In this document: one piece after another, positions 5,845 through 30,000 of the stretch
Numbering within the stretch: position 1 is the stretch's first letter
Layout: each line of letters begins with the position of its first letter
Origin: Macrostomum lignano
Taxonomy: Eukaryota
DNA length: 64,000 nt
Assembly (NCBI GenBank): GCA_002269645.1
Contig: NIVC01001678.1
Location: 124,001 to 188,000 of the forward strand
Reading direction: 5' to 3'
Program-made: the position numbers and the translations under genes
Notes under the pieces: model-generated
Seen by the model: only the letters and a program-made list of their open reading frames with translations
What the model was told of the DNA's origin: nothing
Databases searched by the model: none

Positions 5845-6790
5845 GCACTATTCTCCCACATTAGCCCTACACCCCCAGATTAGCCCCACTTCCCCCAGAT
5901 TAGCACTACTCCCCCGTATTAGCTGCACACCCCCAGATTAGCCCCACTTCCCCCAGATTAGCACTACGCCCAGATTAGTACTGCGCCCAGATTAGCACTG
6001 CGCCCAGATTAGCACTCAGCCCAGATTCGCACTCAGCTCAGATTAGCACTCAGCCCAGATTAGCACTCAGCCCAGATTAGCACTCAGCCTAGATTAGCAC
6101 TCAGCCCAGATTAGCACTCAGCTCAGATTAGCACTCAGCCCAGATTAGCACTTAGCCCAGATTAGCACTCAGCCCAGATTAGCACTCAGCCTAGATTAGC
6201 ACTCAGCCCAGATTAGCACTCAGCCCAGATTAGCACTCAGCCTAGATATCAGCACTCAGCCCAGATTAGCACTCAGCCTAGATTAGCACTCAGCCCAGAT
6301 TAGCACTCAGCCTATATCAGCATTCAGCCCAGATTAGCACTCAGCCTATATCAGCACTCAGCCTAGATTAGCACTCAGCCTAGATTAGCACTCAGCCTAG
6401 ATTAGCACTCAGCCTAGATTAGCACTCAGCCTAGATTAGCACTCAGCCCAGATTAGCACTCAGCCCAGATTAGCACTCAGCCTAGATTAGCACTCAGCCC
6501 AGATTAGCACTCAGCCTAGATTAGCACTCAGCCCAGATTAGCACTCAGCCCAGATTAGCACTACTTCTCCAGATTTGCACCACTCCGCAAAAATTCGCAC
6601 TGCTACTTCCTCTAGATTAGCCCCAATCCCCCAGATTTGCACCACTCTGCAAAAATTCGCACCGCTACTTCCTCCAGATTAGCCCCAATCCCCCAGATTA
6701 GCCCCCCCACTCCTTTATAGTATTATAATTACTCCTTTATATTAGCCCCACTCCCTTAGATTAGCACCGCTCCCCAGATTAGCACCACTC
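5845..6790. repeat. 17-bp minisatellite (AGATTAGCACTCAGCCC) with degenerate flanks
   Basis: Directly visible tandem units; homogeneous core ~6010-6560. Confidence 0.95.
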
Positions 6791-9458: not shown

Positions 9459-12400
9459 ATGGAATCTGGTAGCGGGTCCAAAAAGGCTGACTTCATTGTC
9501 GGCAGCAAGTACAAGTTGACTAGAAAGATTGGCAGCGGATCCTTTGGCGAAATCTATCTAGGCGTCAGCGTCATCAATGGCGAGGAGGTTGCGGTGAAAC
9601 TTGAACCAGTCACTGCCCGACATCCACAGCTGCTCTATGAGAGCAAGGTGTACAAGATTCTCCAGGACGGTATTGGTATTCCTACCATCAGGTAAAGTGT
9701 CTAAAGTTTTATATGACATGTACTTGCATGCCAAGTTTAATCACTGATCACTGAATCTTAAATATCCAAGGGCCACTGAACTATACCAGGATATAAAACT
9801 TAAAGATTGTGTAATTTTTTTGGAGGCCTATTTCCTGGGAAAAATGATTTTTCCCATCTCCGCAGTGCATTTTTTTCCGGGAAATAGGCCTTCAAAAATT
9901 ACACAATCTTTGTGATCTGCGTCCTGCTATACTGCAGTGTTCCTTTCAAACAGCTTTCACCCAGCTTAAATAATCTAAGAAATTTGAAAGTCTTAGACTC
10001 TAGTGGTACAGTATTTCCATTATGAATAGATCGGGTCATTGATATTGTTAGTAGCTAGAATGGTATCGAATATCAGAAATGCATATGCCATTTGTGCATC
10101 GCAGTTCGAAAATAAGACTGCTCATTTTACATTAAAAAACTGCTGAGCACAGACATTAAAATGAACTGAGACTAATCTGCATATTTATGGTCCTAAACTC
10201 ATGCCATTCCGCCTGCAATCTGCAGTGTGGCAGAGTTCGGACAAAGCAAAGAATAGAACGTGACTGCGCAGATATTTAAACCATTGGTAATTGGAATGTA
10301 GATCAATTCCCCCATTTCGGCATTATGTGGCTAAATAAACTTCTAGAATAATATAAGAAAAAAAAATGAACTAGATTATTATGATGTGTTCCTTACTACC
10401 AAGACTTTCTTAGTAATCAAAGAACAATCACTTCTAGCTACTGCTAGGCAACCCAGTAATCAAATGAAGGTACCTCTTACCTTGAGTCCTGTCTTGGAGA
10501 GCTCTTTCTTGTTTTGCAATTCTCGGACTTCTGGACTCGTTAGACGTCTATGTTTCGTAAACCAGGTACACGTTCCTTTACTTCCACTGAAGTCGTTTCC
10601 GGCCGGTATCTGCAGTCAGGACCAATCAGAAGCTTCGTGTTATCGATGGGGGGATCCCTGCGCCTTAATGCGGTTTCAAATAAGCCTCCTCCTTCTAGCG
10701 GTGTCTTAATGCACCCTAGGTATAGCTCCGGTATTTACTGATAGTCCTCTAAGATCTATTAGGGTAGTCCTTCCAGAGACTACAACCAATAAGTCTCAAC
10801 AGACTCAAACACCTGGCGCAAATGAGTAAGACTTACCGCAAGAACTCGACCGAGTCTCGAATTACTTGGTCGGAAGGAAGTCCTTTGGAGGCTTCCTCTC
10901 GGAGCTCTTCTTCCTTCTGGAAGGCAAAAATCTTGAGCTCCGGTCCGCTCTGGACCACTTGTACAGTATTTATAGGCAATCGGACCCCACATGAGGTCAT
11001 TGAGTCCATTGTCTTAAATGTCAAAGGTTCACGGATTGGTTGCTGTCAAACATGGCAGGTTAGAAAGTTACTCCATTGGTTTAGTGTGAGCATGCATGAT
11101 TGGTTACCGTAGCCGAGTTATTTTAATTTTAGATACTTTTGATTGGTTCATCCGAGCGCAGGCTGAATGATGCATCGCAACTGGGGTTTGAGCTGACAAT
11201 CGCGGGTCACACGTGATTGGGTGATTTCTAAAATTAGCATGCTCGAGATTTCTCTCTTCCTATTGGTTGATTCAAATATATGTATGGTTCAGCGCATATC
11301 TTTCTATACATGCTACTCATTTTACTACTATATAAGTAGTACGTTAACAATTTTATCACTTGTGGGAGGTGAGAGTTGAGAGTGACAGAAGAGAAATGAA
11401 GTGTTCTGTTGGTTCTGATTCTTTTCAAGGGATAATCTCGAAATTCGATATCCAATTGTGCAGCAAATGCTTTTTGGTTCAAATGTTGCATGTACCGAAT
11501 GCCACACAATCTTGTGCCAACGCCAGGTGGTACGGTCAGGATGGCCTGAAAAACCAATACAACTGCCTTGTGATGGACCTGCTCGGCCCCAGCCTGGAGG
11601 ATTTGTTCACCTTCTGTTCGCGCCGCTTCACTATGAAAACTGTGCTGATGCTGGCCGATCAGATGCTCTGCCGGGTGGAGTTTGTGCATAATAAGAATTT
11701 CATTCACCGGTAATGCAAGCATTGACGTGGTTGTGAAATCTGGCTTTAGATTTACTGAGACCGCCGCCTCGCTCCTACAACTCTCACGCTGTGGGCTACT
11801 GCCGCCTTCCCGATCCCCAGTTGCCTGGCCAGCCTCCCAGATCCCCAGTTGCCTGGTCAGCCTCCCAGATCCCCAGTTGCCTGGCCAGCCTCCCAGATCC
11901 TCAGTTGCTGGGCCAGCCTCCCAGATCCCCAGTTGCCTGGCCAGCCTCCCAGATCCTCAGTTGCTGGGCCAGCCTCCCAGATCCCCAGTTGCTGGGCCAG
12001 CCTCCCAGATCCTCAGTTGCTGGGCCAGCCTCCCAGATCCTCAGTTGCTGGGCCAGCCTCCCAGATCCCCAGTTGCTGAGCCAGCCTCCCAGATCCCCAG
12101 TTTCTTGGTAAGCCAGCCTCCCAGATCCTCAGTTGCTGGGCCAGCCTCCCAGATCCTCAGTTGCTGGGCCAGCCTCCCAGATCCCCAGTTGCTGAGCCAG
12201 CCTCCCAGATCCCCAGTTGCTTGGCCAGCATCCCAGATCTTCAGTTGCTGAGCCAGCCTCCCAGATCCCCAGTTACTGGGCCAGCCTCCCAGATCCCCAG
12301 TTGCTAGGCCAGCATCCCAGATCCCCAGTTGCTGGGCCAGCCTCCCAGATCCTCAGTTGCTGGGCCAGCCTCCCAGATCTCCAGTTGCTGGGCCAGCCTC

Positions 12401-14051
12401 CCAGATCCCCAGTTGCTGGGCCAGCCTCCCAGATCCTCAGTTGCTGGGCCAGCCTCCCAGATCCTCAGTTACTGGGCCAGCCTCCCAGATCCCCAGTTGC
12501 TGGTCCAGCCTCCCAGATCCTCAGTTGCTGGGCCAGCCTCCCAGATCCTCAGTTGCTGGGCCAGCTTCTCAGATCCTCAGTTGCTGGGCCAGCCTCCCAG
12601 ATTCTCAGTTGCTGAGCCAGCCTCCTAGATCCTCAGTTGCTGGGCCAGCTTCTCAGATCCTCAGTTGCTGGGCCAGCCTCCCAGATTCTCAGTTGCTGGG
12701 CCAGCCTCCCAGATCCTTAGTTTCTGGTCCAGCTTCTCAGATCCAGCTTCATATAAGTATCAATAACATTATTAAAAAAGCCCTAGCAAATCATGCACAA
12801 TCATTCCCACAGCGACATCAAACCGGACAACTTTCTAATGGGCATCGGGCGCCACTGCAACAAATTATTCCTTGTAGACTTCGGTCTGGCCAAAAAGTAC
12901 CGGTTAGTGTTATTGCGCAATTTCTTGCCCCAGATATTTCAATCAGCCCTCCCTCCTCAATACAAATTCATTCGCCTTTGCCCTCAGCGACTCCCGCACG
13001 AAGGCGCACATTCCTTATCGCGACGACAAGAACCTGACTGGCACGGCTCGCTACGCCTCGGTCAATGCGCACGCCGGCATTGAACAGTCGCGTCGGGACG
13101 ATCTGGAAAGTCTTGGTTACGTTTTCATGTACTTCCTGCGCTCCTCGCTGCCCTGGCAAGGACTCAAGGTTGGTGGCAACTCTTCTCATCTTCTTGTTTT
13201 AGGCCTTGTGTCACTTTCCACTGTGGTAGTGTCACTCTTCGCTATTTACGTCATTGTTCGTATCTATCTGTCACTCTCTGTATCTATCTGTCGCTCTCCA
13301 TATTTATCTGTCACTCTCCATATCTATCTGTCACTCCCCATATCTATTTGTCACTCTCCGTATCTATCTGTCACTCCCCATATCTATTTGTCACTCTCCG
13401 TATCTATCTGTCACTCTCCATATCTATCTGTCACTCCCCATATCTATCTGTCACTCTCCATATCTATCTGTCACTCTCCGTATCTATCTGTCACTCCCCA
13501 TATTTATCTGTCACTCTCCATATCTATCTGTCACTCTCCATATTTATCTGTCACTCTCCATATTTATCTGTCACTCTCCATATCTATCTGTCACTCTTCA
13601 TATTTATCTGTCACTCTCCATATCTATCTGTCACTCCCCATATTTATCTGTCACTCTCCATATTCATCTGTCACTATCCACTGCTCTTGTGTCACTCTAT
13701 ACCATACTCCCAAAACACACACAGGCGAACAACAAGAAGCAGAAATACGAGCGCATCTACGAGAAGAAGGTGTCCACCCCGATCGAGAGCCTGACCAGGG
13801 GCTACCCGCCGGAGTTCAGCCGCTACCTAAGCTACTGCCGCAATCTGAAATTTGAAGAGGCCCCAGACTATCGTTGGTTGCGCGAGAATTTTCGCATACT
13901 ATTCCGCACGTTGAACTTCGTGTTCGACTACGTGTTCGACTGGACCCTGCTAAAACAGCGGGCTACTACTTCGTCCGTCTCTGCCGGCGCCGGCGCCGGC
14001 GGCGGAACGTCGAACAACGCGGTCGGCCTCCTTGGCGGCGGAAACAGGTGA
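9459..14051 (+). CDS. CSNK1A1: Casein kinase I isoform alpha
   Basis: Exons 9459-9691, 11527-11709, 12813-12902, 12988-13168, 13725-14051; all GT..AG and phase-consistent; 1014 nt = 337 aa. Motifs [42 protein letters not shown] and LPWQGLK; the GIGRHCNK insert is typical of CK1 alpha. Confidence 0.97.
9774..9939. mobile_element. Small foldback/MITE-like inverted repeat in CK1 intron 1
   Basis: CACTG...CAGTG ends; arms aaagattgtgtaattttt..ggaggcctatttcc and ggaaataggccttcaaaaattacacaatcttt are reverse complements; no TSD seen. Confidence 0.55.
10968..11266 (-). promoter_or_regulatory. Putative antisense Pol II promoter (CCAAT cluster + TATA), possibly LTR-derived
   Basis: Six ATTGG on + (11035, 11075, 11099, 11142, 11216, 11262) and a minus-strand CTATAAAT at 10968-10975. 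Confidence 0.35.
11810..12745. repeat. 28-bp minisatellite (CCAGCCTCCCAGATCCTCAGTTGCTGGG) in CK1 intron 2
   Basis: Tandem units; the same unit recurs at 49560-50345. Confidence 0.95.
13255..13690. repeat. 20-bp minisatellite (TATCTATCTGTCACTCTCCA) in CK1 intron 4
   Basis: Tandem units directly visible. Confidence 0.95.
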
Positions 14052-14309
14052 ATTGGATTTATTTTAGCTAACTAATAATAAATCCAACTATTTGTGCCAG
14101 CTTTGGACTCTGGAGAGGGGAGGGTTTGATTGAAATATTTAACTGTACAAAGATATCTCAAGACAAAATTTCAGTTAGAATTGCAGTTCTCTGAATGTTA
14201 AATAACTGGTCATTGGCAGCTCTTTTAATGACCAACTGATTTTAGTTATAAAATATTTTTTTGGGATTTGAAATATACTAAAGAAGCCCATTGGTAATTC
14301 TTCTATTTC

Positions 14310-15780
14310 CATATCCCATTGGTAATACTACCAGATCCCATTGGTAATACTACCAGATCCCATTGGTAATACTACCAGATCCCATTGGTAATGCTACCAG
14401 ATCTCATTGGTAATACTACCAGATCCCATTGGTAATGCTACCAGATCTCATTGGTAATACTACCAGATCCCATTGGTAATGCTACCAGATCCCATTGGTA
14501 ATACTACCAGATCCCATTGGTAATGCTACCAGATCTCATTGGTAATACTACCAGATCCCATTGGTAATGCTACCAGATCTCATTGGTAATACTACCAGAT
14601 CCCATTGGTAATGCTACCAGATCCCATTGGTAATACTACCAGATCCCATTGGTAATGCTACCAGATCCCATTGGTAATACTACCAGATCCCATTGGTAAT
14701 GCTACCAGATCTCATTGGTAATACTACCAGATCCCATTGGTAATGCTACCAGATCCCATTGGTAATACTACCAGATCCCATTGGTAATGCTACCAGATCC
14801 CATTGGTAATGCTACCAGATCTCATTGCTAATGCTACCAGATCCCATTGGTAATGCTACCAGATCCCATTGGTAATACCACCATACTACCATATCCCATT
14901 GGTAATACCACCATACTACCATATCCCATTGGTAATTCTACCAGATCCCATTGGTAATGCTACCAGATCCCATTGGTAATACTACCAGATCCCATTGGTA
15001 ATACGACCAGATCCCATTGGTAATACTACCAGATCCCATTGGTAATGCTACCAGATCCCATTGGTAATACTACCAGATCCCATTGGTAATGCTACCAGAT
15101 CCCATTGGTAATACTACCAGATCCCATTGGTAATGCTACCAGATCCCATTGGTAATACTACCAGATCCCATTGGTAATGCTACCAGATCCCATTGGTAAT
15201 ACTACCAGATCCCATTGGTAATACTACCAGATCCCATTGGTAATACTACCAGATCCCATTGGTAATGCTACCAGATCCCATTGGTAATACTACCAGATCC
15301 CATTGGTAATGCTACCAGATCCCATTGGTAATACTACCAGATCCCATTGGTAATGCTACCAGATCCCATTGGTAATACTACCAGATCCCATTGGTAATAC
15401 TACCAGATCCCATTGGTAATACTACCAGATCTCATTGGTAATGCTACCAGATCCCATTGGTAATACTACCAGATCCCATTGGTAATGCTACCAGATCCCA
15501 TTGGTAATACTACCAGATCCCATTGGTAATGCTACCAGATCCCATTGGTAATACTACCAGATCCCATTGGTAATGCTACCAGATCCCATTGGTAATACTA
15601 CCAGATCCCATTGGTAATGCTACCAGATCCCATTGGTAATACTACCAGATCCCATTGGTAATGCTACCAGATCCCATTGGTAATACTACCAGATCCCATT
15701 GGTAATACTACCAGATCCCATTGGTAATACTACCAGATCCCATTGGTAATGCTACCAGATCCCATTGGTAATACTACCAA
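14310..15780. repeat. 22-bp minisatellite (CCCATTGGTAATRCTACCAGAT) downstream of the CK1 stop
   Basis: Highly homogeneous array; A/G variant units; internal inverted repeat TGGTA..TACCA. Confidence 0.97.
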
Positions 15781-17205: not shown

Positions 17206-17948
17206 ATCTATCTTGGAATCGAAATTCGTTATAGACTACTTGCAACAAAGCTTGTTTAGAGATTCAGTGTTAGCTTATTAATGCATTGCAGTGTAGCTTG
17301 CCATTAAAATAGTCCAGCGGGACTGACAGAGAGATTCAGTTTTTGTAAGATTAATTTTTCCACAAACTTAACGCAGTATAATTGTTGACTTTCGACCGGC
17401 TCGAATTTGGCGTCTGATAAAATACCGGGTTGAAACTTCAATTCCTGGTAAAATCTTAAGCGGCCTAACTTTATCGTACTTTGACTTATGAATTTTGTCA
17501 ATTGGCCTAACAAAAATTTGCGCACTTTGCTGTGCCAGTAAGTTTCCATTCGTCAGCAGTTTTCACCCGCGATTATCAGTGTGCATTACACACTCGCGGC
17601 AGATAAACCCAACCGGTTTGCGAGTAGTGACACACGAAATTGCTTTTTCTGTTTGGAGAAGTTTTTCCTGCCTTGGAAACAGGTTTTGTTTTTGCTGTGG
17701 ATTTTACTGCTTTCACCGAAGCTTTCCACTCGCCTGCACTTGAAAACACCAGTGAAAATGCCCAGTGAGCTGCGGTATATTATGGAATTCCAATGACCCT
17801 CATAGATGCGAAACTGCCTATAAATATGCAACCTGTTTTGTGTGTGTGAATTAAGTCTACCGCTATCAGCACTGTAACTGAGTCTTTCTAAGCAGATTGG
17901 AATTTTTTGTTCAGTTGTCCAACTTTTTTTACAGTTTCTAGAAACAGC

Positions 17949-20900
17949 ATGTCTGCCTGCACTGGTAAGATCGCATTAAAACCATAAGTCCTTCCTATAT
18001 ACTAAATATAGAAATAAATTATACCAAAAATCATGTTTGTCTCTACCTATTCATCTAGGTATAGCCAATGCTGTGGATGATTAGACAACCCGTTTGGATG
18101 GGTAGACAACCCCCTGGATGATTGGACAACCACTTGAATGATTAGAAAACCCCCGTGGATGATTAGACAACCCAATAGATGGTCGGATAACCTCCTGGAT
18201 GATTAGACAACCCCATAGATGGTCAGAGTCAGACAACCTCCTGGATGATTAGACAACCCCCTGAATGATTAGACAACCCCCTGAATGATTAGACAACCCC
18301 CTGAATGATTAGAACCCCCTGAATGATTAGACAACCCCCTGAATGATTAGACAACCCTCTGAATGATTAGTGATTAGAGAACCCCCTGAATGATTAGACA
18401 ACCGTGGATTCGTTTGAAAAACGCAACCGCTTAGAAAACTTCATGAATGATAAGACTAACATGATGATTAAACTGGATGATTAGACAGTCACGCATGGAT
18501 GATAGTAGGCAAATCTTGCAGCCCACAAGAAGATTGACGCACTTGCACCTCCCGTCTCCGCCCCTGCAGAGACCCGCCAACAGATGCTAAGCTACTGGAA
18601 GGGCCACGGCAAGCCCTCCCTAGAGATGATGATGCTGGATAGCAACGCAGCCTCCATCGCCGACCGCGAGACGCAGGAAATCCTGGGCATGCTGCCGCCC
18701 GTAAACGGTCTGGACGTTGTGGAACTTGGCGCTGGGATCGGCCGGTTCACCAAGCACCTGGCGACGCTAGCCGGCAGTCTGCACGCCTCAGATTTCATGC
18801 AGAATTTCATCGACAAGAATCGCGAAGACAATGGTCACCATGGCAACCTGACTCTGGCTGTAGCCGACGCCACCCAGATGACGATGCCGGCAGATTGCTG
18901 CGACCTGGTGTTCTCCAACTGGCTGTTCATGTACCTGGACGACGAAGAGGTGCGCGGCGTGTTCGCCAGAATCCTCGACTGGCTTCGGCCGGGTGGACAT
19001 TTCTTCTTCCGCGAGTCCTGCTTCCACCGGTCCGGCTCGGTGGCCCGCACCGACAACCCCACCAAGTACCGATCGCCGCAGAGGTACAACGAGCTGCTAC
19101 TTGAGGCTGCTCACGGCTCTCACCGGTTCGGTCACGTGTTCACCAGACCGAGCCGAACCTACGTGTCCACCAAGGGCAACCGGAACCAGATGTGCTGGCT
19201 GGTGCGCAAGACTCCGCTGAGTTCGCCGGACGAGATCGACCGGATGAAGGCGGCTCATATGAGTCTCATGAACGGACCCAGCGATGAGAAGTGAGTCTAA
19301 ATCTGCCAAACACAGGTGTCCAAGGGTCTCCGGCCACCTCCGTGTCATTGAGTGTCCTCTGGGTCCTCAGGTGTCCAAGGGTCTCCGGCCACCTCTGTGT
19401 CATTGAGTGTCTTCTGAGTCCTAGATATCTGTACCACCAACCTCCCGTGTCCTCGGGTATCTGGACCACCAACCTACCGTGTCCTCGGGTATCTGGACCA
19501 CCAACCTACCGTGTCCTCGGGTATCTGGACCACCAACCTCCCGTGTCCTCGGAGCATCTGGGTATCTGGACCACCAACCTCCCGTGTCCTCGGAGCATCT
19601 GGGTATCTGGACCACCAACCTCCCGTGTCCCGATCGCATCCCAATCACGATGTCACCAACACCGCCATCCCTGTCCAACCGCAGGCTCGAATCCGTTTTG
19701 GCCGAGGGCAGCGAAGCGGCCGCTCTGTGCGACTATCTCGGTGTCCAGCCGGGCGAGACTGTCCTTGACGTTGGCTGCGGATTGGGAGACACCTCCTGCC
19801 TGCTAGCTAAGGTAGATGCTCGTTAAATTTTTTATTAGAAAATGAATACAGTAAGGAATGATGACAGATTCCACCGGTGCAACAATTTGCATGTACCTTT
19901 GAAAATCAAATTTTCAGAAATACGACGCCAACGTGATTGGTTTTGACATCGCCGGCCCACTGGTCAGTCTGGCTCTGCAGCGGGCCAATCAGCTGGGCGT
20001 GCAAAATGTGAGCGCAATTGTCCGGTATTGCTTCTAGGAAAGTCTGCGGTTTCTTAGAAAAATCAAGGTTGATTGATCGAGTTCTTTATCCAATGCAGGT
20101 TCTATGATTTGGTTCATGGATGAATTCTTAAGTGAGTGTGGTAATTATTGTGTCATGAGTGAGGCCATGAGTGAGGCCATAAGGCGAGGTCCTGAGTGAG
20201 TTCATGAGTGAAGCCATGAGTGAGGCCATAAGGCGAGGTCCTGAGTGAGGTCATGAGTGAAGCCATGAGTGAGGCCATAAGGCGAGGTCCTGAGTGAGGT
20301 CATGAGTGAGGCCATGAGTGAGGCCATAAGGCGAGATCCTGAGTGAATTCATAAGAAGAGGCCATGAGGTAAGATAATGAGTGAGGTCGTATATTATGCG
20401 AAATCATAAGTGAGCTCATTTGAGAGATCATGTGCTGAGGTCATGAGTGAGTCATGAGGAGACGTTGTGGGTGAATTCATGAGGTGAGTGAAGTCATGAA
20501 CAAGTGAGATCATGACAAGTTCTGAGGGAATGTGTACATTAAGCTTTTATTATAGCGAGATCATTCATAATTCACGGAACTTTATGAGAAACTCGACTAA
20601 TTTAAGGTAGCAAATGTACTTTAGAAACTTTTTCTCGCGTTGCCAGGTGCTGTTTGAGCTGGCCGATATTGAGACCTGCGAACTGTACGAGGAGGAGACG
20701 TTCGATGTGATCTACTGCCGCGACGTGATGCACTACGTGACGGATAAGGGCAGCGTGCTGGCCAAGTTTTATGTGAGAATTTGAGCTTAATTGCTTTTTC
20801 GATTTTTTCTTTTTTATCTGACTCTATTCTAGCTACTTACGAAGCCAAGGATTGCGAGTAGTATTGGATATGCAATAAACATTTTGCAGAACCAGCAAAA

Positions 20901-23900
20901 CTTTACAAACTTCACAAACTATAGAATCGTCACAAACTATAGAATCGTCACAAACTACAGAATCGTCACAAACTATAGTACCCCTGGTATCTTCACAAAC
21001 TATAGAATCTTCACAAACTATAGAATCTTCACAAACTATAGAATCTTCACAAACTATGGAATCTTCACAAACTATAGAATCTTCACAAACTATAGAATCT
21101 TCACAAACTATAGAATCTTCACAAACTATAGAATCTTCACAAACTATAGAATCTTCACAAACTATAGAATCTTCACAAACTATAGAATCTTCACAAACTA
21201 TAGAATCTTCACAAACTATAGAATCTTCACAAACTATAGAATCTTCACAAACTATAGAATCTTCACAAACTATAGAATCTTCACAAACTATAGAATCTTC
21301 ACAAACTATAGAATCTTCACAAACTATAGAATCGCCCTGTTTCGTTGCAGAAATGGCTGAAGCCCGGCGGCCGCCTCTGTCTAACAGACTACTGCCCGTT
21401 AAGAAATCAGCCCAATACCGCTGATGACTCATCCGCTGACGTCAGCGCGGCCTACTCACGCGATGCCTACATTTCGGCTTTGAAATCTGCCGGATTTGCC
21501 GACTCGACCGTCACTACGGACGACTTGACGCCGCGGTTCGAGTCGGCGGCTCTGGCCAAATGTCGAATTCTTGAACAGGCCAGGCACCTCTTTGTGCAGG
21601 TGCGATGAGTTCTGATTTTGTTACTCTGGCTTTTGTTTTCATCTAGTCCACATCGACGTTGATCCATCGACTCTCCAATTAGTCATCTATTGGCTCTCTA
21701 ATTAGTCATCTATCGAAAGGCTGTTGCGTCGTAATCATCCAGACACATATAGGAGCACTAATTAGGCATCCACAGACACACTGATTAGGCACCCACAGAC
21801 ACACTGATTAGGCACCCACAGACACACTGATTAGGCAGCCACAGACACACTGATTAGGCAACCACAGACACACTGATTAGGCACCCACAGACGCACTGAT
21901 TAGGCACCCACAGACACACTGATTAGGCATCCACAGGCACACTGATTAGGCAACCACAGACACACTGATTAGGCATCCACAGGCACACTGATTAGGCACC
22001 CACAAACACACTGATTAGGCACCCACAGACACACTGATTAGGCACCCACAGACACACTGATTAGTTATCCACAGACACACTGATTAGTTATCCACAGACA
22101 CACTGATTAGTTATCCACAGACACACTGATTAGGCACCCACAGACACACTGATTAGGTATTCACAGACACACTGATTAGGTATCCACAGACACACTGATT
22201 AGGCATCCACAGACACACTGATTAGGCACCCACAGACACACTGATTAGGCATCCACAGGCACACTGATTCGGCACCCACAGACACACTGATTAGGCACCC
22301 ACAGACACACTGAGTAGGCATCCACAGACACACTGATTAGGCACCCACAGACGCACTGATTAGGTATTCACAGACACACTGATTAGGTATCCACAGACAC
22401 ACTGATTAGGCATCCACAGACACACTGATTAGGCACCCACAGACACACTGATTAGGTATTCACAGACACACTGATTAGGTATCCACAGACACACTGATTA
22501 GGCATCCACAGACACACTGATTAGGCATCCACAGACACACTGATTAGGCACCCACAGACACACTGATTAGGTATTCACAGACACACTGATTAGGCACCCA
22601 CAGACACACTGATTAGGTATCCACAGACACACTGATTAGGTATACACAGACACACTGATAAGGTATCCACAGACACGCTGATTAGGCACCCACAGACATA
22701 CTGATTAGGTATCCACAGGCACACTGATTAGGCACCCACAAACACACTGATTAGGCACCCACAGACACACTGATTAGGCACCCACAGACACACTGATTAG
22801 TTATCCACAGACACACTGATTAGTTATCCACAGACACACTGATTAGTTATCCACAGACACACTGATTAGGCACCCACAGACACACTGATTAGGTATTCAC
22901 AGACACACTGATTAGGTATCCACAGACACACTGATTAGGCATCCACAGACACACTGATTAGGCACCCACAGACACACTGATTAGGCATCCACAGGCACAC
23001 TGATTCGGCACCCACAGACACACTGATTAGGCACCCACAGACACACTGAGTAGGCATCCACAGACACACTGATTAGGCACCCACAGACGCACTGATTAGG
23101 TATTCACAGACACACTGATTAGGTATCCACAGACACACTGATTAGGCATCCACAGACACACTGATTAGGCACCCACAGACACACTGATTAGGCACCCACA
23201 GACACACTGATTAGGCATCCACAGGCACACTGATTCGGCACCCACAGACACACTGATTAGGCACCCACAGACACACTGAGTAGGCATCCACAGACACACT
23301 GATTAGGCACCCACAGACGCACTGATTAGGTATTCACAGACACACTGATTAGGTATCCACAGACACACTGATTAGGCATCCACAGACACACTGATTAGGC
23401 ACCCACAGACACACTGATTAGGTATTCATAGACACACTGATTAGGTATCCACAGACACACTGATTAGGCATCCACAGACACACTGATTAGGCACCCACAG
23501 ACACACTGATTAGGTATTCACAGACACACTGATTAGGCACCCACAGACACACTGATTAGGTATTCACAGACACACTGATTAGGTATCCACAGACACACTG
23601 ATAAGGTATCCACAGACACGCTGATTAGGCACCCACAGACATACTGATTAGGTATCCACAGACACACTGATTAGGTATCCACAGACACACTGATTAGTTA
23701 TCCACAGACACACTGATTAGTTATCCACAGACACACTGATTAGTTATCCACAGACACGCTGATTAGGCACCCACAGACATACTGATTAGGTATCCACAGA
23801 CACGTTGATTAGTTATCCACAGACACACTGATTAGGCACCCACAGACACACTGATTAGTTATCCACAGACACACTGATTAGTTATCCACAGACACGCTGA

Positions 23901-24174
23901 TTAGGCACCCACAGACATACTGATTAGGTATCCACAGACACGTTGATTAGTTATCCACAGACACACTGATTAGTTATCCACAGACACACTGATAGGGCCC
24001 CCAATTCTCATGTGTCCCCAATTCCTATAATTCCCACTGAATTCCGCATTCAATTTCCAGCAATTCAACGAGTCGTCCAGATTTGAGCAGGCTCAAGTGA
24101 ACTGGCAGAGACGCTTGGCAATGTGCCAGAGCGGCGAACTGGCCTGGATTCTATATCACGTGACCAAGCAGTGA
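17949..24174 (+). CDS. Phosphoethanolamine N-methyltransferase (two-domain PMT/PEAMT-like)
   Basis: Exons 17949-17964, 18570-19290, 19685-19811, 19918-20007, 20647-20772, 21351-21599, 24061-24174; phase-consistent; 1443 nt = 480 aa. The N-terminal domain has SYW..MMLD, VELGAGIGRFT, FSNWLFMYL, FFRESCFH and NPTKYR as in plant NMTs; the C-terminal domain has VLDVGCGLG, FDVIYCRD and KWLKPGG..TDYC. Confidence 0.93.
18075..18490. repeat. ~20-bp minisatellite (CTGAATGATTAGACAACCCC) in PMT intron 1
   Basis: Degenerate tandem units. Confidence 0.85.
19310..19630. repeat. 32-bp (and 41-bp variant) minisatellite in PMT intron 2
   Basis: GGGTATCTGGACCACCAACCTACCGTGTCCTC with period 32 (19451/19483); later units carry a GAGCATCTG insert. 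Confidence 0.85.
20150..20520. repeat. ~49-bp repeat built from CATGAGTGAGGC subunits in PMT intron 4
   Basis: AAGGCGAGG recurs at 20181 and 20230; degenerate tail. Confidence 0.8.
20905..21335. repeat. 18-bp minisatellite (CTTCACAAACTATAGAAT) in PMT intron 5
   Basis: Near-perfect tandem array ending ~20 bp before the acceptor. Confidence 0.97.
21765..23995. repeat. 23-bp minisatellite (CTGATTAGGCACCCACAGACACA) in PMT intron 6
   Basis: About 2.2 kb array with variant units and higher-order duplications. Confidence 0.97.
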
Positions 24175-24852
24175 AATTACAGACTGGCCTTGACTAGACT
24201 TTGCGAATACTGCCGTGTATTTTGAGCTGTGGTTCCAAGTGCATGAATATGTACTTTTCAAATATTTTAAGTAACTGTTTGAAAATAGCAAAGATTCCTA
24301 CGAGTCGGATCTAATTGTTGGATATTAAGGAGAAATTCCTGAAATTTTCTCAGCATTTAGCACGCAGAAAACAATGCTATAAGAAGATATATTTAACTGC
24401 ATCATTTTTGTTCATCTAGTACTTGTAGTCAGTTAATAGGCGTAAGTTTTAAACACTTCAAGAAAGAAATCTATTTTTTTATTGGATCCGACAGTTGTAT
24501 TTGAGGTGCGAGACTACTATTAATAGTAGCAGTACATGTATATTTTACATGTTTGTATACTTACGAGTAGTCATTGAAGCGCATTGGTGCAAATGTAAAG
24601 ATAAATCTATAAAGGATTTGCGAGATATTCTTATGGCAATGTGTATTCACATGAATATTTTCAACGCTTGCACATGCCACTCCACTGCATGTAACTTTCC
24701 CAATAATGGAAACGTGAATTAAAGTACATTTAATATTGCTGAAAAATAAATTGTCCGCAAAATTTTATCGTAAAACTGATTATTAGCATATAATGATTTA
24801 AATACCAAGCAATTAGCACTATATGTGAGTTATATGAGTCTAATTATTATTT

Positions 24853-27008: not shown

Positions 27009-30000
27009 CTAGCTGTAGTATCTCACTCTAGGCTTGAAAGTCTCAGTGACATTAAACAGCGGCTTCCGCCTCTTCCTCATGTAATCATAGCCCAGGTGCA
27101 GGAAGCGGTGCACAGCCACAGTGCTGTTGTCAGAGTCATCCATGCTCCAGTTTTTCAACTTCAGCATGCGACAGCCGCGATCCAACCAGCGAAGAGGATT
27201 CTTTCTCCCGGGCGGCTCTGCAAAGAGGAGCGCAGGCTTCGTTTCGTTTATTGGACAGCGGAGAAGAGGGTAGAGAGCGAACTGATTAGGGATAGGGAAA
27301 GGATATACGAGTCTAGAAGAGAGACCTACATGTACACAGGGGAGATCGCGGAGACAGTGGGATACAAGTATGGATAAGAGTGAGTGGGAAAGATTAGGAA
27401 GAGAGTGAAGATCAGCGAGTAGAGAGCGGAGATCAGCGGGTAGAGAGCGGAGATCAAGGGTAGAGAGCGGAGATCAGCGGGTAGAGAGCGGAGATCAAGG
27501 GTAGAGAGCGGAGATCAGCGGGTAGAGAGCGGAGATCAGAAGGTAGAGAGCGGAGATCAGCGGTTAGAGAGCGGAGATCAAGGGTAGAGAGCGGAGATCA
27601 GCGGTTAGAGAGCGGAGATCAAGGGTAGAGAGCGGAGATCAGCGGTTAGAGAGCGGAGATCAAGGGCAGAGAGCGGAGATCAAGGGTAAGAAGAGCGGAG
27701 ATCAAGGGTAGAGAGCGGAGATCAGCGGGTAGAGAGCGGAGATCAGCGGGTAGAGAGCGGAGATCAGCGGGTAGAGAGCGGAGATCAGCGGTTAGAGAGC
27801 GGAGATCAAGGGTAGAGAGCGGAGATCAAGGGTAAGAAGAGCGGAGATCAAGGGTAGAGAGCGGAGATCAAGGGTAGAGAGCGGAGATCAAGGGTAGAGA
27901 GCGGAGATCAGCGGTTAGAGAGCGGAGATTAAGGGTAGAGAGTGAAGATCAGCGGGTAGAGAGCGGAGATCAAGGGTAGAGAGCGGAGATCAGCGGGTAG
28001 AGAGCGGAGATCAAGGGTAGAGAGCGGAGATCAGCGGTTAGAGAGCGGAGATCAAGGGTAGAGAGCGGAGATCAGCGGGTAGAGAGCGGAGATCAAGGGT
28101 AGAGAGCGGAGATCAAGGGTAGAGAGCGGAGATCAGCGGTTAGAGAGCGGAGATCAAGGGTAGAGAGCGGAGATCAAGGGTAGAGAGCGGAGATCAAGGG
28201 TAGAGAGCGGAGATCAAGGGTAGAGAGCGGAGATCAGCGGTTAGAGAGCGGAGATCAAGGGTAGAGAGTGAAGATCAGCGGGTAGAGAGCGGAGATCAGC
28301 GGGTAGAGAGCGGAGATCAGCGGGTAGAGAGCGGAGATCAGCGGGTAGAGAGCGGAGATCAGCGGGTAGAGAGCGGAGATCAAGGGTAGAGAGCGGAGAT
28401 CAAGGGTAAGAAGAAACTCGCATCGCTCCGGCAATTCCAACTATAAATATATGCTCTCAAAGCATGCTGAATACCAAGCTGGACACTCACTGGCTCCGCG
28501 GCAGACAATCGTCCAGTTGGTCTGCCAGTCCATCAGCGGGGAGGCCACGCTGGGTGGCAGCAGCGTGTACCGGCCAGCTGCGGGCAGACCGGCTGTCTCT
28601 GTAGTTCTTGTAAACCTGCGTGAGAACAATCGGCCCAGTTGAGACTAAAGCTGTACCGGGAAGCCTCCTGGCGAGCACTTTGTGCATCATGGAACTGAAG
28701 AAGGGATGCCCCGGCACCGAGCCCATCAGGGAGTTCATGGCGCTGAAATTGGCGCCATGAATGATTCTGGTCAGCTCCAGCCGCTCCTGGTCGATGAAGG
28801 CCGCCTGCCGGGTGAGGCTCGGCCCGAACGGCTTCACGCATTCGACGTCCATGTCCAGGTAGATGCCTGAAAGGCAGCCACAGTTGATAGGGAAATCTGA
28901 GAGGATTCAGATGAAGATCTGGGAGGATTCTGATAGAGATCTGGCAGGATCACGATGGAAATCTGGAAAAATTCTGATTGAGATCTGGGAGGATTCTGAT
29001 GGAGATTTGGGAAGATTCTGATAGAGATCTGGCAGGATCACGATGGAAATCTGGAAAAATTCTGATTGAGATCTGGGAGGATTCTGATGGAGATTTGGGA
29101 AGATTCTGATTGAGATCTGTGAGGATTCTGACCAAGATATGAGGATTCTGGTGGAGATCTTGGATGCACCATATTTGATGACTCCATAAAAAGTGCAAGT
29201 GCAGCACCTCCGAACCGGTGCAGGATGACGTATCGAATGGCGTCAGAGCGTTGCAAGTTGTATTTGAAGCTCAGGTAAGTCTTCAAGTATTGAGGATACT
29301 CCTTGGAGATAAGAGCCCTGGCATCGGAGTCCCGCCACAGGTAATAAGTCCAGTTGGGGTTGAGCTTCAGGCAGCTGCTTATCATTGGCCGGTAATTCTC
29401 GTAGACCATCTCGGAGGCGAAGGTTTGGTGCAGAATTTGAGGAATGTCGAAGGCAGCTGGGGGATTTTCTTGTCTGTGATTGGCAGCACCCTGTTGAACT
29501 CCATGAGAAGAGATTGGATAGCTATGTGTTAGTTGATTGTCTTCAGCTGTTGCATAAGCCGCCGAGTTGATGTATTTGTAGCATAGAAGTGTCTGAAATT
29601 ACAATGTAGTTTGAGTAAAACATTGGCACAGTCTCTTCACTCTTCACTGGTGACCCCAAATTAGGTAGGTAGGCATACAAGTGACCGACAGCGTCTTCTG
29701 CCAGCAGCGTCTTCTACGCCACCGATCCAACCCTCCCTTCCTCCTCTTCCCTTGTTGCAGGCTCGGTGGTGCAGCTATGTCACGGGACGGGGAGAGAGGC
29801 TCTACCCCTCTCCCGCTGGCTCAGGCTGCAAGAGGGCTAAAAATAGAACATTAGTCAGTGGGATATTTCTCCATTAATACAGTCTTTGTTAAGTCAGCGG
29901 GAACGAGAGCATAGCTCTCCGCCCCGGGTAGGCTCCTGTGGGAATCTGGGGGTGCACTCCTTGCATGCTGTAACATGCAAGCGGTGTACCAGCAGGCCAC

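What the first reader, a model, noticed from the sequence alone, without database searches (positions are those of the whole stretch)
17949..24174. Two-domain PMT whose C-terminal methyltransferase domain has lost the phosphobase-binding/catalytic motifs
Seen: domain 1 keeps all plant-type PEAMT hallmarks. Domain 2 keeps the SAM-binding motif (VLDVGCGLG, GFDI) and RDVMH, but the segment that in plant NMT and Plasmodium PMT reads QY...RYERVFG..FVSTGG is replaced by unrelated sequence of similar length (HMSLMNGPSDEKLESVLAEGSEAAAL). The YIKQRGY-type phosphate-binding loop is also absent and W..K reads WQRR. Established: nematodes split the pathway into PMT-1 (active N-domain, vestigial C-domain) and PMT-2 (the reverse), whereas plants use both domains; the QY tyrosine is catalytic in PfPMT. 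Inference: an independent PMT-1-like subfunctionalisation, or a SAM-binding domain 2 with a new substrate, in a non-nematode animal.
Basis: partly seen in the sequence, partly recalled or inferred. Interest (0 to 1): 0.7.

Follow-up and report, generated by a model that had tools for sequence, protein, structure and literature searches.

The report
Flatworm PEAMT with remodelled second domain
This is an annotated gene of the flatworm Macrostomum lignano for a two-domain phosphoethanolamine methyltransferase: the first domain is fully canonical, while the second still looks built to bind SAM and is kept by selection but has lost almost every residue that normally holds and methylates the phosphobase, so it probably no longer makes phosphocholine in the usual way.

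Summary
The 480-aa, 7-exon gene model is real and identical to GenBank protein BOX15_Mlig021435g1/g3 of Macrostomum lignano. Domain 1 (MT1) keeps 61 of 62 positions that are at least 95% conserved in 106 two-domain PEAMTs. Linker plus domain 2 (MT2) keeps 45 of 90. The SAM contacts D61, G63, D85, D110, R127 and D128 (PfPMT numbering) are intact. The latch and phosphate clamp are not: Y19 is lost, Y27 is L, the STGG loop is deleted (7 aa), H132 is Y, Y175 is lost, R179 is D, Y181 is S and K247 is R.

The His in RDVMH is one residue out of register. The "unrelated" segment is diverged homologous sequence with a deletion.

The only other M. lignano paralogue found (56% identical) also has an intact MT1 and a derived MT2, sharing Y27L, H132Y and K247R. 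So this is not a nematode-like reciprocal PMT-1/PMT-2 split.

MT2 is under purifying selection (dN/dS 0.11-0.18 against a homeologue). Intron 2 holds no hidden exon.

Best reading: an active first-step MT1 fused to a maintained SAM-binding MT2 that has a changed substrate or role. This is a new variant of a known kind, of moderate interest.

The parts
17949..17964 (+). Exon 1: start codon, residues M1-T5 plus the first base of codon 6. It is followed by intron 1 (17965-18569), which is phase 1.
   Evidence: The intron position and phase match the paralogue gene and the Lingula canonical PEAMT gene.
18570..19290 (+). Exon 2: the whole MT1 domain (about aa 6-225) plus the start of the linker (to the first two bases of K246). 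MT1 includes ELGAGIGRFT (SAM motif I), FSNWLFMYL, FFRESCFH and NPTKYR. It also includes W15, M26, M27 and W123.
   Evidence: 61 of 62 canonical positions conserved at 95% or more are kept. W15, M26, M27 and W123 align with HcPMT1 W14, M26, M27 and W123 (alignment, constant offset 6). PMC10269165 says these residues restrict the site to the first methylation. AF2 pLDDT is mostly above 90.
19291..19684 (+). Intron 2 (394 nt, phase 2, GT-AG), filled with 55-, 32- and 41-bp tandem repeats. It has no coding potential for the missing motifs and sits at a position not shared with other PEAMT genes.
   Evidence: Three-frame translation and tblastn. Repeats. The intron is absent from the paralogue gene. 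The nearest Lingula intron maps 12 codons downstream, at window aa 258.0. Reading through the donor hits TGA immediately.
19685..19811 (+). Exon 3: decayed lid (K246-L-E-S-V-L-A-E-G254), the site of the 7-aa deletion (between 19709 and 19710), then SAM motif I VLDVGCGLG (19761-19787).
   Evidence: Alignment with the paralogue and canonical PEAMTs. Low AF2 confidence for residues 231-260 (block means 75, 54, 67), against 78-89 for the same region of the paralogue model.
19918..20007 (+). Exon 4: post-I strand GFDI, with D298 (the PfPMT D85 position, which contacts the SAM ribose) and the following helix.
   Evidence: The role of the PvPMT D82 equivalent is given in PMC4357015.
20647..20772 (+). 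Exon 5: LADIE, with D325/I326 (adenine contacts). Then YCRDVMHY (20719-20736): R343 and D344 are kept, H347 sits at the L131 position and Y348 sits at the catalytic H132 position.
   Evidence: H132 is 100% conserved in 106 canonical proteins.
21351..21599 (+). Exon 6: KWLKPGGRL and LTDYC (Y374, the Y160 position, kept). Then an acidic loop PLRNQPNTADDSSADVSAAYSRDA (21396-21467) replaces the F172/Y175/R179/Y181 phosphate clamp (D385, gap, D390, S392).
   Evidence: AF2 pLDDT is 49 for residues 381-390.
24061..24174 (+). Exon 7: C-terminal helix NWQRRLAMC (W458; R461 at the K247 position; 24103-24114), the last strand LAWILYHV, and the stop codon.
   Evidence: G243N, K247R, R250M, Q256L and G259I are shared with the paralogue.

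Best explanation
The locus is a functional, transcript-annotated Macrostomum lignano paralogue of plant-type two-domain phosphoethanolamine N-methyltransferase.

MT1. The N-terminal domain is canonical and most likely still methylates phosphoethanolamine to phosphomonomethylethanolamine.

MT2. The C-terminal domain keeps the Rossmann core and nearly every side chain that contacts SAM. It has lost the lid (the QY / RYE..FG / STGG elements) and the tyrosine/arginine phosphate clamp.

History. The erosion began in the common ancestor of the two M. lignano paralogues (shared Y27L, H132Y, K247R, G68D and others). It went further in this copy, through the 7-aa deletion of the STGG loop and the replacement of R179 by D within an acidic loop.

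What selection says. MT2 is still under purifying selection, so it is not a decaying remnant. It is most likely a SAM-binding module that no longer carries out the canonical second and third phosphobase methylations. Instead it either acts on a different acceptor or serves a structural or regulatory role beside MT1.

Shown here: the gene structure, the residue losses, their timing relative to the duplication, the selective constraint and the two-domain fold. Inferred: MT1 activity, loss of pMME/pDME activity in MT2, and any new role.
For: Gene model and annotation.
- The model is rebuilt with GT-AG introns and is identical to GenBank PAA65158.1/PAA74097.1.
- The GenBank annotation derives from an RNA-seq, genome-guided transcriptome (PMC5730564).
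- Three genomic copies share the structure: L002 has an identical CDS, and homeologue g2 in L003 has the same exon lengths.

Asymmetric conservation.
- MT1 keeps 61 of 62 conserved positions and MT2 keeps 45 of 90 (p = 3e-12).
- MT1 is 50% identical to Lingula and MT2 is 26%. Canonical pairs are 57-64% identical in MT2.

Residues.
- Key-residue table.
- Residue roles from PvPMT: dyad Y16/H129; phosphate bound by Y24, Y157, Y178 and R176; SAM bound by D107/I108, D82, the backbone N of I33 and G60.
- A secondary source reports that Y27, Y160, Y175 and Y181 are each important for PfPMT activity.

Timing. Fifteen identical replacements are shared with the paralogue and 19 further ones occur only in the window gene. 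The four M. lignano genes are monophyletic at 100% bootstrap.

Selection.
- g3 against g2: 26 synonymous and 10 nonsynonymous changes.
- MT2 core dN/dS is 0.11 (p = 0.0007 against neutrality). Linker plus MT2 is 0.18 (p = 0.003).
- Paralogue pair: 7 synonymous and 0 nonsynonymous changes in MT2 (p = 3e-5).

Structure.
- AF2 model: pLDDT 88.3, pTM 0.88, with confidence dropping exactly at the lid (231-260) and the former clamp loop (381-390).
- Best PDB matches are AtPMT1 5wp4 (E = 5e-52) and the nematode and Plasmodium PMTs.

MT1 first-step residues W15, M26, M27 and W123 are present.
Against: - No biochemical data exist for any non-nematode animal PMT, so both 'MT1 is active' and 'MT2 is inactive on phosphobases' are inferences from conservation.
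- Y160, D128 and an Arg at the K247 position (preceded by another Arg, R460) remain. A Tyr-x-Arg (Y395, R397) lies a few residues downstream of the lost clamp and could conceivably rebuild an anion site.
- Tyr at the H132 position recurs in other PMT-like proteins: Diadema, Sycon, Myxine, Homarus, and a family of roughly 260-aa single-domain proteins. It is therefore not by itself proof of inactivity.
- The dN/dS estimates rest on few substitutions (13 in linker plus MT2).
- I could not scan the M. lignano genome for a further, canonical PMT gene.
Confidence: 0.62

Rival explanations
1. MT2 is still a phosphobase methyltransferase. The pocket has been re-wired, with Tyr348 replacing His132, R460/R461 and possibly Y395/R397 replacing the clamp, and the protein performs all three methylations as plant PEAMT does.
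For: SAM contacts, D128, Y160 and a basic residue at the K247 position are kept. MT2 is under purifying selection. Tyr at the H132 position occurs in many PMT-like proteins. PMC10269165 reports that a PMT2-type enzyme (Toxocara canis PMT) can also perform the first step, which shows some plasticity in the family.
Against: Six of the eight latch and clamp residues, each 97-100% conserved across plants, animals and Plasmodium, are replaced. R179 is replaced by Asp inside a loop carrying three Asp residues. The STGG loop, whose backbone binds the SAM carboxylate and closes the site, is deleted. The lid and the clamp loop are the only low-confidence parts of the AF2 model.
Confidence: 0.12
2. This is a nematode-like division of labour. 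This gene is a PMT-1 equivalent with a dead C-terminal domain, and a second gene with the reciprocal loss supplies steps 2 and 3.
For: MT1 is intact and MT2 lacks the phosphobase residues. The paralogue P0002 keeps more of MT2: FG, SNGG, R179 and a confidently modelled lid. It could therefore carry more of the later steps.
Against: The paralogue's MT1 is as intact as this one (61 of 62), so there is no reciprocal loss. Its MT2 shares Y27L, H132Y and K247R and has Y19F, Y175F and Y181H. No other M. lignano family member appeared among the listed hits. The nematode PMT-1 C-terminal domain does not resemble this SAM-motif-bearing MT2 at the sequence level.
Confidence: 0.1
3. MT2, or the whole gene, is decaying after gene and genome duplication in a neopolyploid. 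On this view the losses are neutral erosion on the way to a pseudogene.
For: M. lignano has recent whole-genome duplication and much redundancy (abstracts). Each paralogue exists in 2-3 copies. The linker itself (aa 226-261) shows 2 nonsynonymous and 0 synonymous differences between homeologues.
Against: The ORF is intact in all copies. dN/dS is 0.11 in the MT2 core (p = 0.0007), and the paralogue pair shows 7 synonymous and 0 nonsynonymous changes. All SAM contacts are retained. Fifteen derived residues are held identical in both paralogues since their split.
Confidence: 0.06
4. This is an annotation or splicing artefact. The true mRNA contains another exon or other splice sites between exons 2 and 3 that restore the QY/RYE/STGG lid.
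For: Intron 2 lies at a position not shared with the paralogue or with the Lingula gene. I could not inspect RNA-seq reads directly.
Against: No frame of intron 2 and no other place in the window encodes anything like the motif. Read-through of the donor stops at once. The same exon lengths occur in homeologue g2 despite different intron lengths. The same 480-aa sequence also carries a MetaClust/UniParc identifier, and the GenBank annotation is RNA-seq based. The losses in exons 5, 6 and 7 (H132Y, the clamp loop, K247R) do not depend on this junction.
Confidence: 0.03

Closest known systems
Plant-type two-domain PEAMT/PMT (Arabidopsis AtPMT1/NMT1, PDB 5wp4; AtPMT2, 5wp5) and its uncharacterised animal orthologues (fish, amphibians, Lingula, Ptychodera)
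   Same: Same MT1-linker-MT2 architecture and length. These are the best sequence matches (E about 1e-93) and the best fold matches (E = 5e-52). MT1 is essentially identical at conserved positions. Five of the six introns are at the same position and phase as in the Lingula gene.
   Different: MT2 keeps only half of the family's conserved positions. It lacks Y19, Y27, the STGG loop, H132, Y175, R179 and Y181, and it is 26% identical where canonical pairs are 57-64% identical.
Nematode PMT-1 (C. elegans PMT-1; Haemonchus contortus HcPMT1, PDB 4krg)
   Same: An active-looking N-terminal MT1 with the W/M/M/W residues that restrict it to the first methylation, joined to a C-terminal domain that is not a canonical phosphobase methyltransferase. 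Overall fold TM-score is 0.72.
   Different: In HcPMT1 the C-terminal half has no detectable sequence similarity to this MT2. Here the SAM motifs and contacts are retained and constrained. No reciprocal PMT-2-type partner was found, and the origin is independent.
Plasmodium PfPMT / PvPMT (single-domain, MT2-type; PDB 3uj6, 4iv0)
   Same: The window MT2 core aligns to PfPMT residues 51-265 (E = 1.5e-21), with the same SAM-contact residues.
   Different: The first 50 residues of PfPMT, which form the lid with Y19, Y27 and I36-G40, have no alignable counterpart. The H132 and Y175/R179/Y181 equivalents are replaced.
M. lignano paralogue BOX15_Mlig004058g1 / Mlig000722g1 (P0002, P0280; 494 aa)
   Same: 56% identical. 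It has the same intact MT1 and shares the derived MT2 residues (GLGDTS, Y27L, H132Y, K247R, NW.RRLAMC, EL.WIL). Four introns are shared.
   Different: The paralogue keeps FG, S-N-G-G, R179 and a basic clamp loop, has no 7-aa deletion, lacks introns 2 and 3, and has a confidently modelled lid.
Other divergent animal PMT-like proteins (Diadema antillarum XP_071494735.1, Sycon ciliatum XP_065185080.1, Myxine glutinosa, Homarus americanus XP_042227688.1)
   Same: Two-domain proteins with Tyr at the H132 position and partial loss of the clamp.
   Different: Their MT1 is also eroded (30-56 of 62 positions kept) whereas the M. lignano MT1 is intact. There is no supported phylogenetic link to the M. 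lignano clade.

Membership tests
Two-domain phosphoethanolamine N-methyltransferase (plant-type PEAMT/PMT, EC 2.1.1.103) | N-terminal MT1 domain with SAM motifs and the conserved PEAMT MT1 residues | tested here: met
   61 of 62 positions conserved at 95% or more are kept. W15, M26, M27 and W123 are present.
Two-domain phosphoethanolamine N-methyltransferase (plant-type PEAMT/PMT, EC 2.1.1.103) | C-terminal MT2 domain with a class I SAM-binding core (D61, G63, D85, D110/I111, R127, D128 equivalents) | tested here: met
   All are kept: D274, G276, D298, D325/I326, R343 and D344. Pfam Methyltransf_25/11 hits at residues 272-370 have E about 1e-37.
Two-domain phosphoethanolamine N-methyltransferase (plant-type PEAMT/PMT, EC 2.1.1.103) | MT2 catalytic latch Tyr19 / His132 (PfPMT numbering) | tested here: not met
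   The Y19 position aligns to M239 in a decayed stretch, and H132 is Y348. Both are 100% conserved in 106 canonical proteins.
Two-domain phosphoethanolamine N-methyltransferase (plant-type PEAMT/PMT, EC 2.1.1.103) | MT2 phosphate clamp Tyr27, Tyr160, Tyr175, Arg179, Tyr181, Lys247, and the S-T-G-G lid loop | tested here: not met
   Only Y160 is kept. Y27 is L, Y175 falls in a gap, R179 is D, Y181 is S, K247 is R, and the loop is deleted.
Two-domain phosphoethanolamine N-methyltransferase (plant-type PEAMT/PMT, EC 2.1.1.103) | Catalyses pEA to pMME to pDME to phosphocholine | not testable with these tools
   This needs enzyme assays or yeast pem1/pem2 complementation.
Nematode PMT-1 type (first-step-only PMT) | Active MT1 with a constrained phosphobase site (HcPMT1 W14, M26, M27, W123) | tested here: met
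   The equivalents W15, M26, M27 and W123 are present (alignment; PMC10269165).
Nematode PMT-1 type (first-step-only PMT) | C-terminal domain vestigial, without SAM-binding motifs | tested here: not met
   [quoted passage not shown] The HcPMT1 C-terminal half does not align with this MT2.
Nematode PMT-1 type (first-step-only PMT) | A separate PMT-2 partner with degenerate MT1 and canonical MT2 in the same genome | tested here: inconclusive
   Only two M. lignano clusters appeared among the hits and both have an intact MT1. The genome itself could not be scanned with these tools.
Class I SAM-dependent methyltransferase fold (MT2 domain on its own) | Rossmann-like alpha/beta core with a glycine-rich motif I and acidic post-I residue | tested here: met
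   AF2 model pLDDT is above 90 over the MT2 core. The alternating strand-helix pattern runs over residues 271-376, with the final strand at 470-478. Foldseek matches to PfPMT, RebM and TleD at E up to 1e-14.

The most novel reading that the evidence does not exclude
MT2 has been neofunctionalised. It remains a working SAM-dependent methyltransferase, but its pocket has lost the phosphate clamp and gained an acidic loop (D385, D386, D390). On this reading it now methylates a different, non-phosphorylated and possibly cationic acceptor. The protein would then be a new bifunctional fusion in which a canonical phosphoethanolamine methyltransferase is coupled to a second, flatworm-specific methylation.
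Probability: 0.3. Interest if true: 0.6.

Novelty: new variant of a known kind. Interest (0 to 1): 0.4.

Why it matters
Phosphobase methylation is treated in the literature as a pathway of plants, nematodes and Plasmodium, with frogs mentioned once (abstracts). Animal PMTs outside nematodes are uncharacterised.

This locus shows a second, independent animal case in which one half of the two-domain enzyme has left the canonical mechanism. It did so by a different route from nematodes: the SAM-binding core was kept under selection, both paralogues eroded in the same direction, and no reciprocal partner was found.

If M. lignano has no canonical MT2 anywhere, one of three things must hold. Its MT1 or its re-wired MT2 completes phosphocholine synthesis. 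Or the pathway stops at pMME. Or MT2 does something new.

M. lignano has working transgenesis methods (PMC5730564), so these alternatives are testable. The scope is one enzyme family in one lineage, which makes this useful to specialists rather than broadly surprising.

Tried and rejected
1. Hidden exon. I ran tblastn of canonical and paralogue linker segments against the window at permissive thresholds and translated intron 2 in three frames. Nothing was found.

2. A second PMT copy in the window. None was found.

3. Selection from the near-identical copy L002. The CDS is identical and there are only 5 intron mismatches, which is uninformative. I used homeologue g2 (L003) instead.

4. An ancient 'Tyr-132' paralogue clade uniting Macrostomum with the Diadema, Sycon, Myxine and Homarus proteins. 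NJ trees give no support (bootstrap 14-46%), and MT1 in those proteins is eroded, unlike here. Rejected as unsupported. The NJ method is crude.

5. Close relatives of the derived MT2 in other species. An exhaustive HMMER search of 1.84 billion representatives gave nothing above 144 bits (30-35% identity), and matches start only at the motif I core. The word-indexed search found only the two M. lignano clusters above 41% identity.

6. Literature on PMT in flatworms. Two full-text searches returned zero papers. The primary PfPMT and AtPMT structure papers (JBC) are not held, so residue roles are cited from PMC4357015, PMC10269165 and a secondary statement in PMC10084581.

7. I could not test whether M. 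lignano has a further, canonical PMT. No tool here scans that genome, and hit lists cannot be filtered by taxon.

8. Rfam scan of the window: no hits.


Full report
WHAT IS THERE. Reading 17500-24600 and splicing at canonical GT-AG sites gives a 7-exon, 1443-nt CDS. The exons are 17949-17964, 18570-19290, 19685-19811, 19918-20007, 20647-20772, 21351-21599 and 24061-24174, and the CDS encodes 480 aa. The protein is 100% identical to GenBank 'hypothetical protein BOX15_Mlig021435g1/g3' of the free-living flatworm Macrostomum lignano (PAA65158.1, PAA74097.1). The same sequence also carries a MetaClust/UniParc identifier.

The GenBank annotation of that assembly was derived from an RNA-seq, genome-guided transcriptome (PMC5730564), so the exon structure is transcript-based. 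A second genomic copy (L002, NIVC01000977.1) has a nucleotide-identical CDS. A homeologue, g2 (P0279, L003), has the same exon lengths with different intron lengths.

Pfam sees two class I SAM-methyltransferase domains. The best PDB sequence matches are Arabidopsis PMT2 and PMT1 (5wp5 and 5wp4, E about 1e-93) over the full length.

CHECK OF THE OBSERVATION. I aligned the protein with 106 canonical two-domain PEAMTs from plants and animals and with PfPMT residues 10-266, taken from the tool output.

MT1 keeps 61 of 62 positions that are at least 95% conserved. Linker plus MT2 keeps 45 of 90 (Fisher p = 3e-12). MT1 is 50% identical to the Lingula enzyme, about as close as Arabidopsis is to Lingula (51.5%). 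MT2 is only 26% identical, where canonical pairs are 57-64%.

The MT2 residues, in PfPMT numbering:
- Kept SAM contacts: D61, G63, D85, D110/I111, R127 and D128.
- Y19 aligns to M239 in a stretch that barely aligns.
- Y27 is L247.
- The I36-S-x-G-G40 loop is removed by a 7-aa deletion.
- H132 is Y348.
- Y160 is kept.
- F172 is D385.
- Y175 falls in a gap.
- R179 is D390.
- Y181 is S392.
- K247 is R461.

Each of these latch and clamp residues is 97-100% conserved in the canonical set.

Their roles are documented for the Plasmodium enzymes. The dyad is Y16/H129 in PvPMT. Phosphate is bound by Y24, Y157, Y178 and R176. The SAM carboxylate is bound to the backbone N of I33. SAM is also held by D107/I108, D82 and G60 (PMC4357015). 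A secondary source states that Y27, Y160, Y175 and Y181 are each important for PfPMT activity.

The core observation is therefore confirmed. Two details are corrected:
1. The His of 'RDVMH' is out of register. With RD and DK as fixed anchors and equal spacing, H347 occupies the L131 position and Y348 occupies the H132 position. The paralogue reads RDVLQY.
2. The 'unrelated' segment is the decayed original. The paralogue reads ...GKLEKIFGKSFLSNGGISSTREL where the window gene reads ...EKLESVLAEG-------SEAAAL.

NO HIDDEN EXON. Intron 2 (19291-19684) is made of 55-, 32- and 41-bp tandem repeats. None of its frames, and nothing else in the 64-kb window, resembles the QY/RYE/FG/STGG lid. Reading through the exon 2 donor gives TGA at once.

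Intron 2 is at a position not shared with the paralogue gene or with the canonical Lingula gene. The nearest Lingula intron maps 12 codons downstream. Introns 1, 3, 4, 5 and 6 are at the same position and phase as in Lingula. The junction is the same in homeologue g2. The losses in exons 5-7 do not depend on this junction.

THE PARALOGUE AND THE HISTORY. The only other M. lignano family member detected is P0002/P0280 (Mlig004058g1, Mlig000722g1; 494 aa; 56% identical).
- Its MT1 is equally intact (61 of 62).
- Its MT2 is also derived (58 of 90).
- Its MT2 residues are Y19F, Y27L, S-N-G-G kept, H132Y, Y175F, R179 kept, Y181H and K247R.

Of the 90 conserved MT2 positions:
- 39 are kept in both paralogues.
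- 15 are changed to the same residue in both, including Y27L, G68D, H132Y and K247R.
- 11 are changed in both, but differently.
- 19 are changed only in the window gene.
- 6 are changed only in the paralogue.

NJ trees put the four M. lignano genes in one clade with 100% bootstrap for both domains, on a very long MT2 branch. They have no supported link to other divergent animal PMT-like proteins. MT2 therefore left the canonical state before the paralogues split, and this copy went further. This is not the reciprocal nematode pattern.

The two search tools cover different ground. The exhaustive search of 1.84 billion cluster representatives with MT2 found nothing closer than 30-35% identity, with matches starting only at motif I. 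The word-indexed search showed no orthologues from other species above 41% identity.

IS MT2 STILL CONSTRAINED? The window gene and homeologue g2 differ by 26 synonymous and 10 nonsynonymous changes. The Nei-Gojobori dN/dS values are:
- 0.08 in MT1;
- 0.18 in linker plus MT2 (p = 0.003 against neutrality);
- 0.11 in the MT2 core, aa 262-480 (p = 0.0007).

The paralogue pair shows 7 synonymous and 0 nonsynonymous changes in MT2 (p = 3e-5). The counts are small but consistent. MT2 is being maintained and is not decaying.

STRUCTURE. AlphaFold2 with a 69-sequence alignment gives pLDDT 88.3 and pTM 0.88. Confidence is above 90 across MT1 and the MT2 core. The only weak stretches are the lid and linker (residues 231-260, block means 75, 54, 67) and the former clamp loop (381-390, mean 49). 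In the paralogue model the lid is confident (78-89) and only the clamp loop is weak (56-68).

Foldseek against the PDB returns AtPMT1 (5wp4, E = 5e-52), then AtPMT2, HcPMT1 (TM-score 0.72), the PMT-2 enzymes and the Plasmodium PMTs.

HOW IT MOST LIKELY WORKS. MT1 keeps every conserved residue. That includes the equivalents of HcPMT1 W14, M26, M27 and W123, which restrict that enzyme to the first methylation (alignment; PMC10269165). MT1 is therefore most likely a phosphoethanolamine to pMME methyltransferase.

MT2 should still bind SAM, because six of the seven contact elements are kept. The lost one is the lid-loop backbone contact. MT2 no longer has the latch, the lid loop or the phosphate clamp, and it carries an acidic loop where the Arg/Tyr clamp used to be. 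I consider canonical pMME and pDME methylation by this MT2 unlikely (about 0.1).

The constraint on the domain argues for a retained role. That role is either a new methyl acceptor or a SAM/SAH-binding structural or regulatory partner of MT1. These two cannot be separated by sequence.

The paralogue keeps R179, a basic loop and a foldable lid. It is the better candidate for any residual later-step activity. If so, the arrangement is asymmetric, not reciprocal.

COMPARISON AND NOVELTY. The protein belongs to the two-domain PEAMT lineage by descent and architecture, but it fails the family's MT2 catalytic and substrate-binding criteria. It functionally resembles nematode PMT-1 (first step only) but fails that type's defining vestigial, SAM-less C-terminal domain and its reciprocal PMT-2 partner.

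I found no publication on PMT in flatworms. The protein is in databases only as 'hypothetical' or auto-named.

Verdict: a real feature and a new variant of a known kind. Interest is moderate (0.4). The most novel reading not excluded is a neofunctionalised MT2 (probability about 0.3).

Noticed in passing
window 18077-18370, 19313-19630, 20152-20368, 20898-21333, 21756-23993; also 5952-6562, 11804-12744, 14309-15779, 27400-28408, 56952-59843 and others: Five of the six introns of the gene (all but the 106-bp intron 3) carry their own, unrelated minisatellite. The periods are 20, 32/41/55, 49, 18 and 23 bp, and the last has 97 copies that fill most of intron 6. The whole window holds more than 20 such arrays with periods of 17-49 bp. 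Copy number differs between the near-identical genomic copies: intron 5 is 578 bp in the window and 596 bp in L002. This is consistent with the 15% tandem-repeat content reported for the genome.
   Followed up: partly
window 19291-19684 (intron 2): This intron sits at a position and phase (aa 245.67, phase 2) not shared with the paralogue or with the canonical Lingula gene. The other five introns are ancient and shared. It lies exactly in the decayed lid region. It could be an intron gain, or a slide from the ancestral position 12 codons downstream.
   Followed up: partly
P0123 (Diadema antillarum XP_071494735.1), P0126 (Sycon ciliatum), P0128 (Myxine glutinosa), P0125 (Homarus americanus): Several other animals carry divergent two-domain PMT-like proteins that also have Tyr at the catalytic His132 position and a partly lost phosphate clamp. 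In these proteins MT1 is eroded as well. Loss of canonical MT2 chemistry seems to have happened repeatedly in animals and appears undescribed.
   Followed up: partly
P0147-P0149, P0163, P0166, P0181, P0199, P0265, P0267 (about 210-400 aa; representatives): This is a mostly single-domain PMT-like family (P0148 is longer, 402 aa) with a recurring signature. The signature is Y19 kept, S (A in P0147) at position 27, Y at 132, F at 160 and C (A in P0147) at 179. The family's source organisms were not looked up.
   Followed up: no
P0121 (553 aa, Logan assembly) and P0003 (Penaeus chinensis, 657 aa): These are unusual architectures in the same family. P0121 is a tandem of two complete MT2-type domains with no MT1. 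The Penaeus protein has MT1 and MT2 plus an extra partial MT2 C-terminal segment.
   Followed up: no
window 59913-61094 (+): A long ORF here contains a Radical_SAM C-terminal domain (PF16199, E = 1.3e-12). It is probably an exon of an ELP3-like gene. Part of the ORF overlaps 24/48-bp tandem repeats (60291-60981).
   Followed up: no
window about 11949-14070 (corresponds to L002 1-2122): The upstream neighbour on the + strand is annotated in the sister copy as a protein kinase gene (Pkinase, 337-aa product running off the locus). The flanks of the two genomic copies are about 97% identical, while the PMT gene itself is almost identical.
   Followed up: no
window 17930-17948: An AG acceptor-like site preceded by a T-rich tract (ttttttttacag) lies 15 nt upstream of the ATG. 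In a species where about 39% of genes are SL trans-spliced, this may be the trans-splice acceptor. It was not tested.
   Followed up: no
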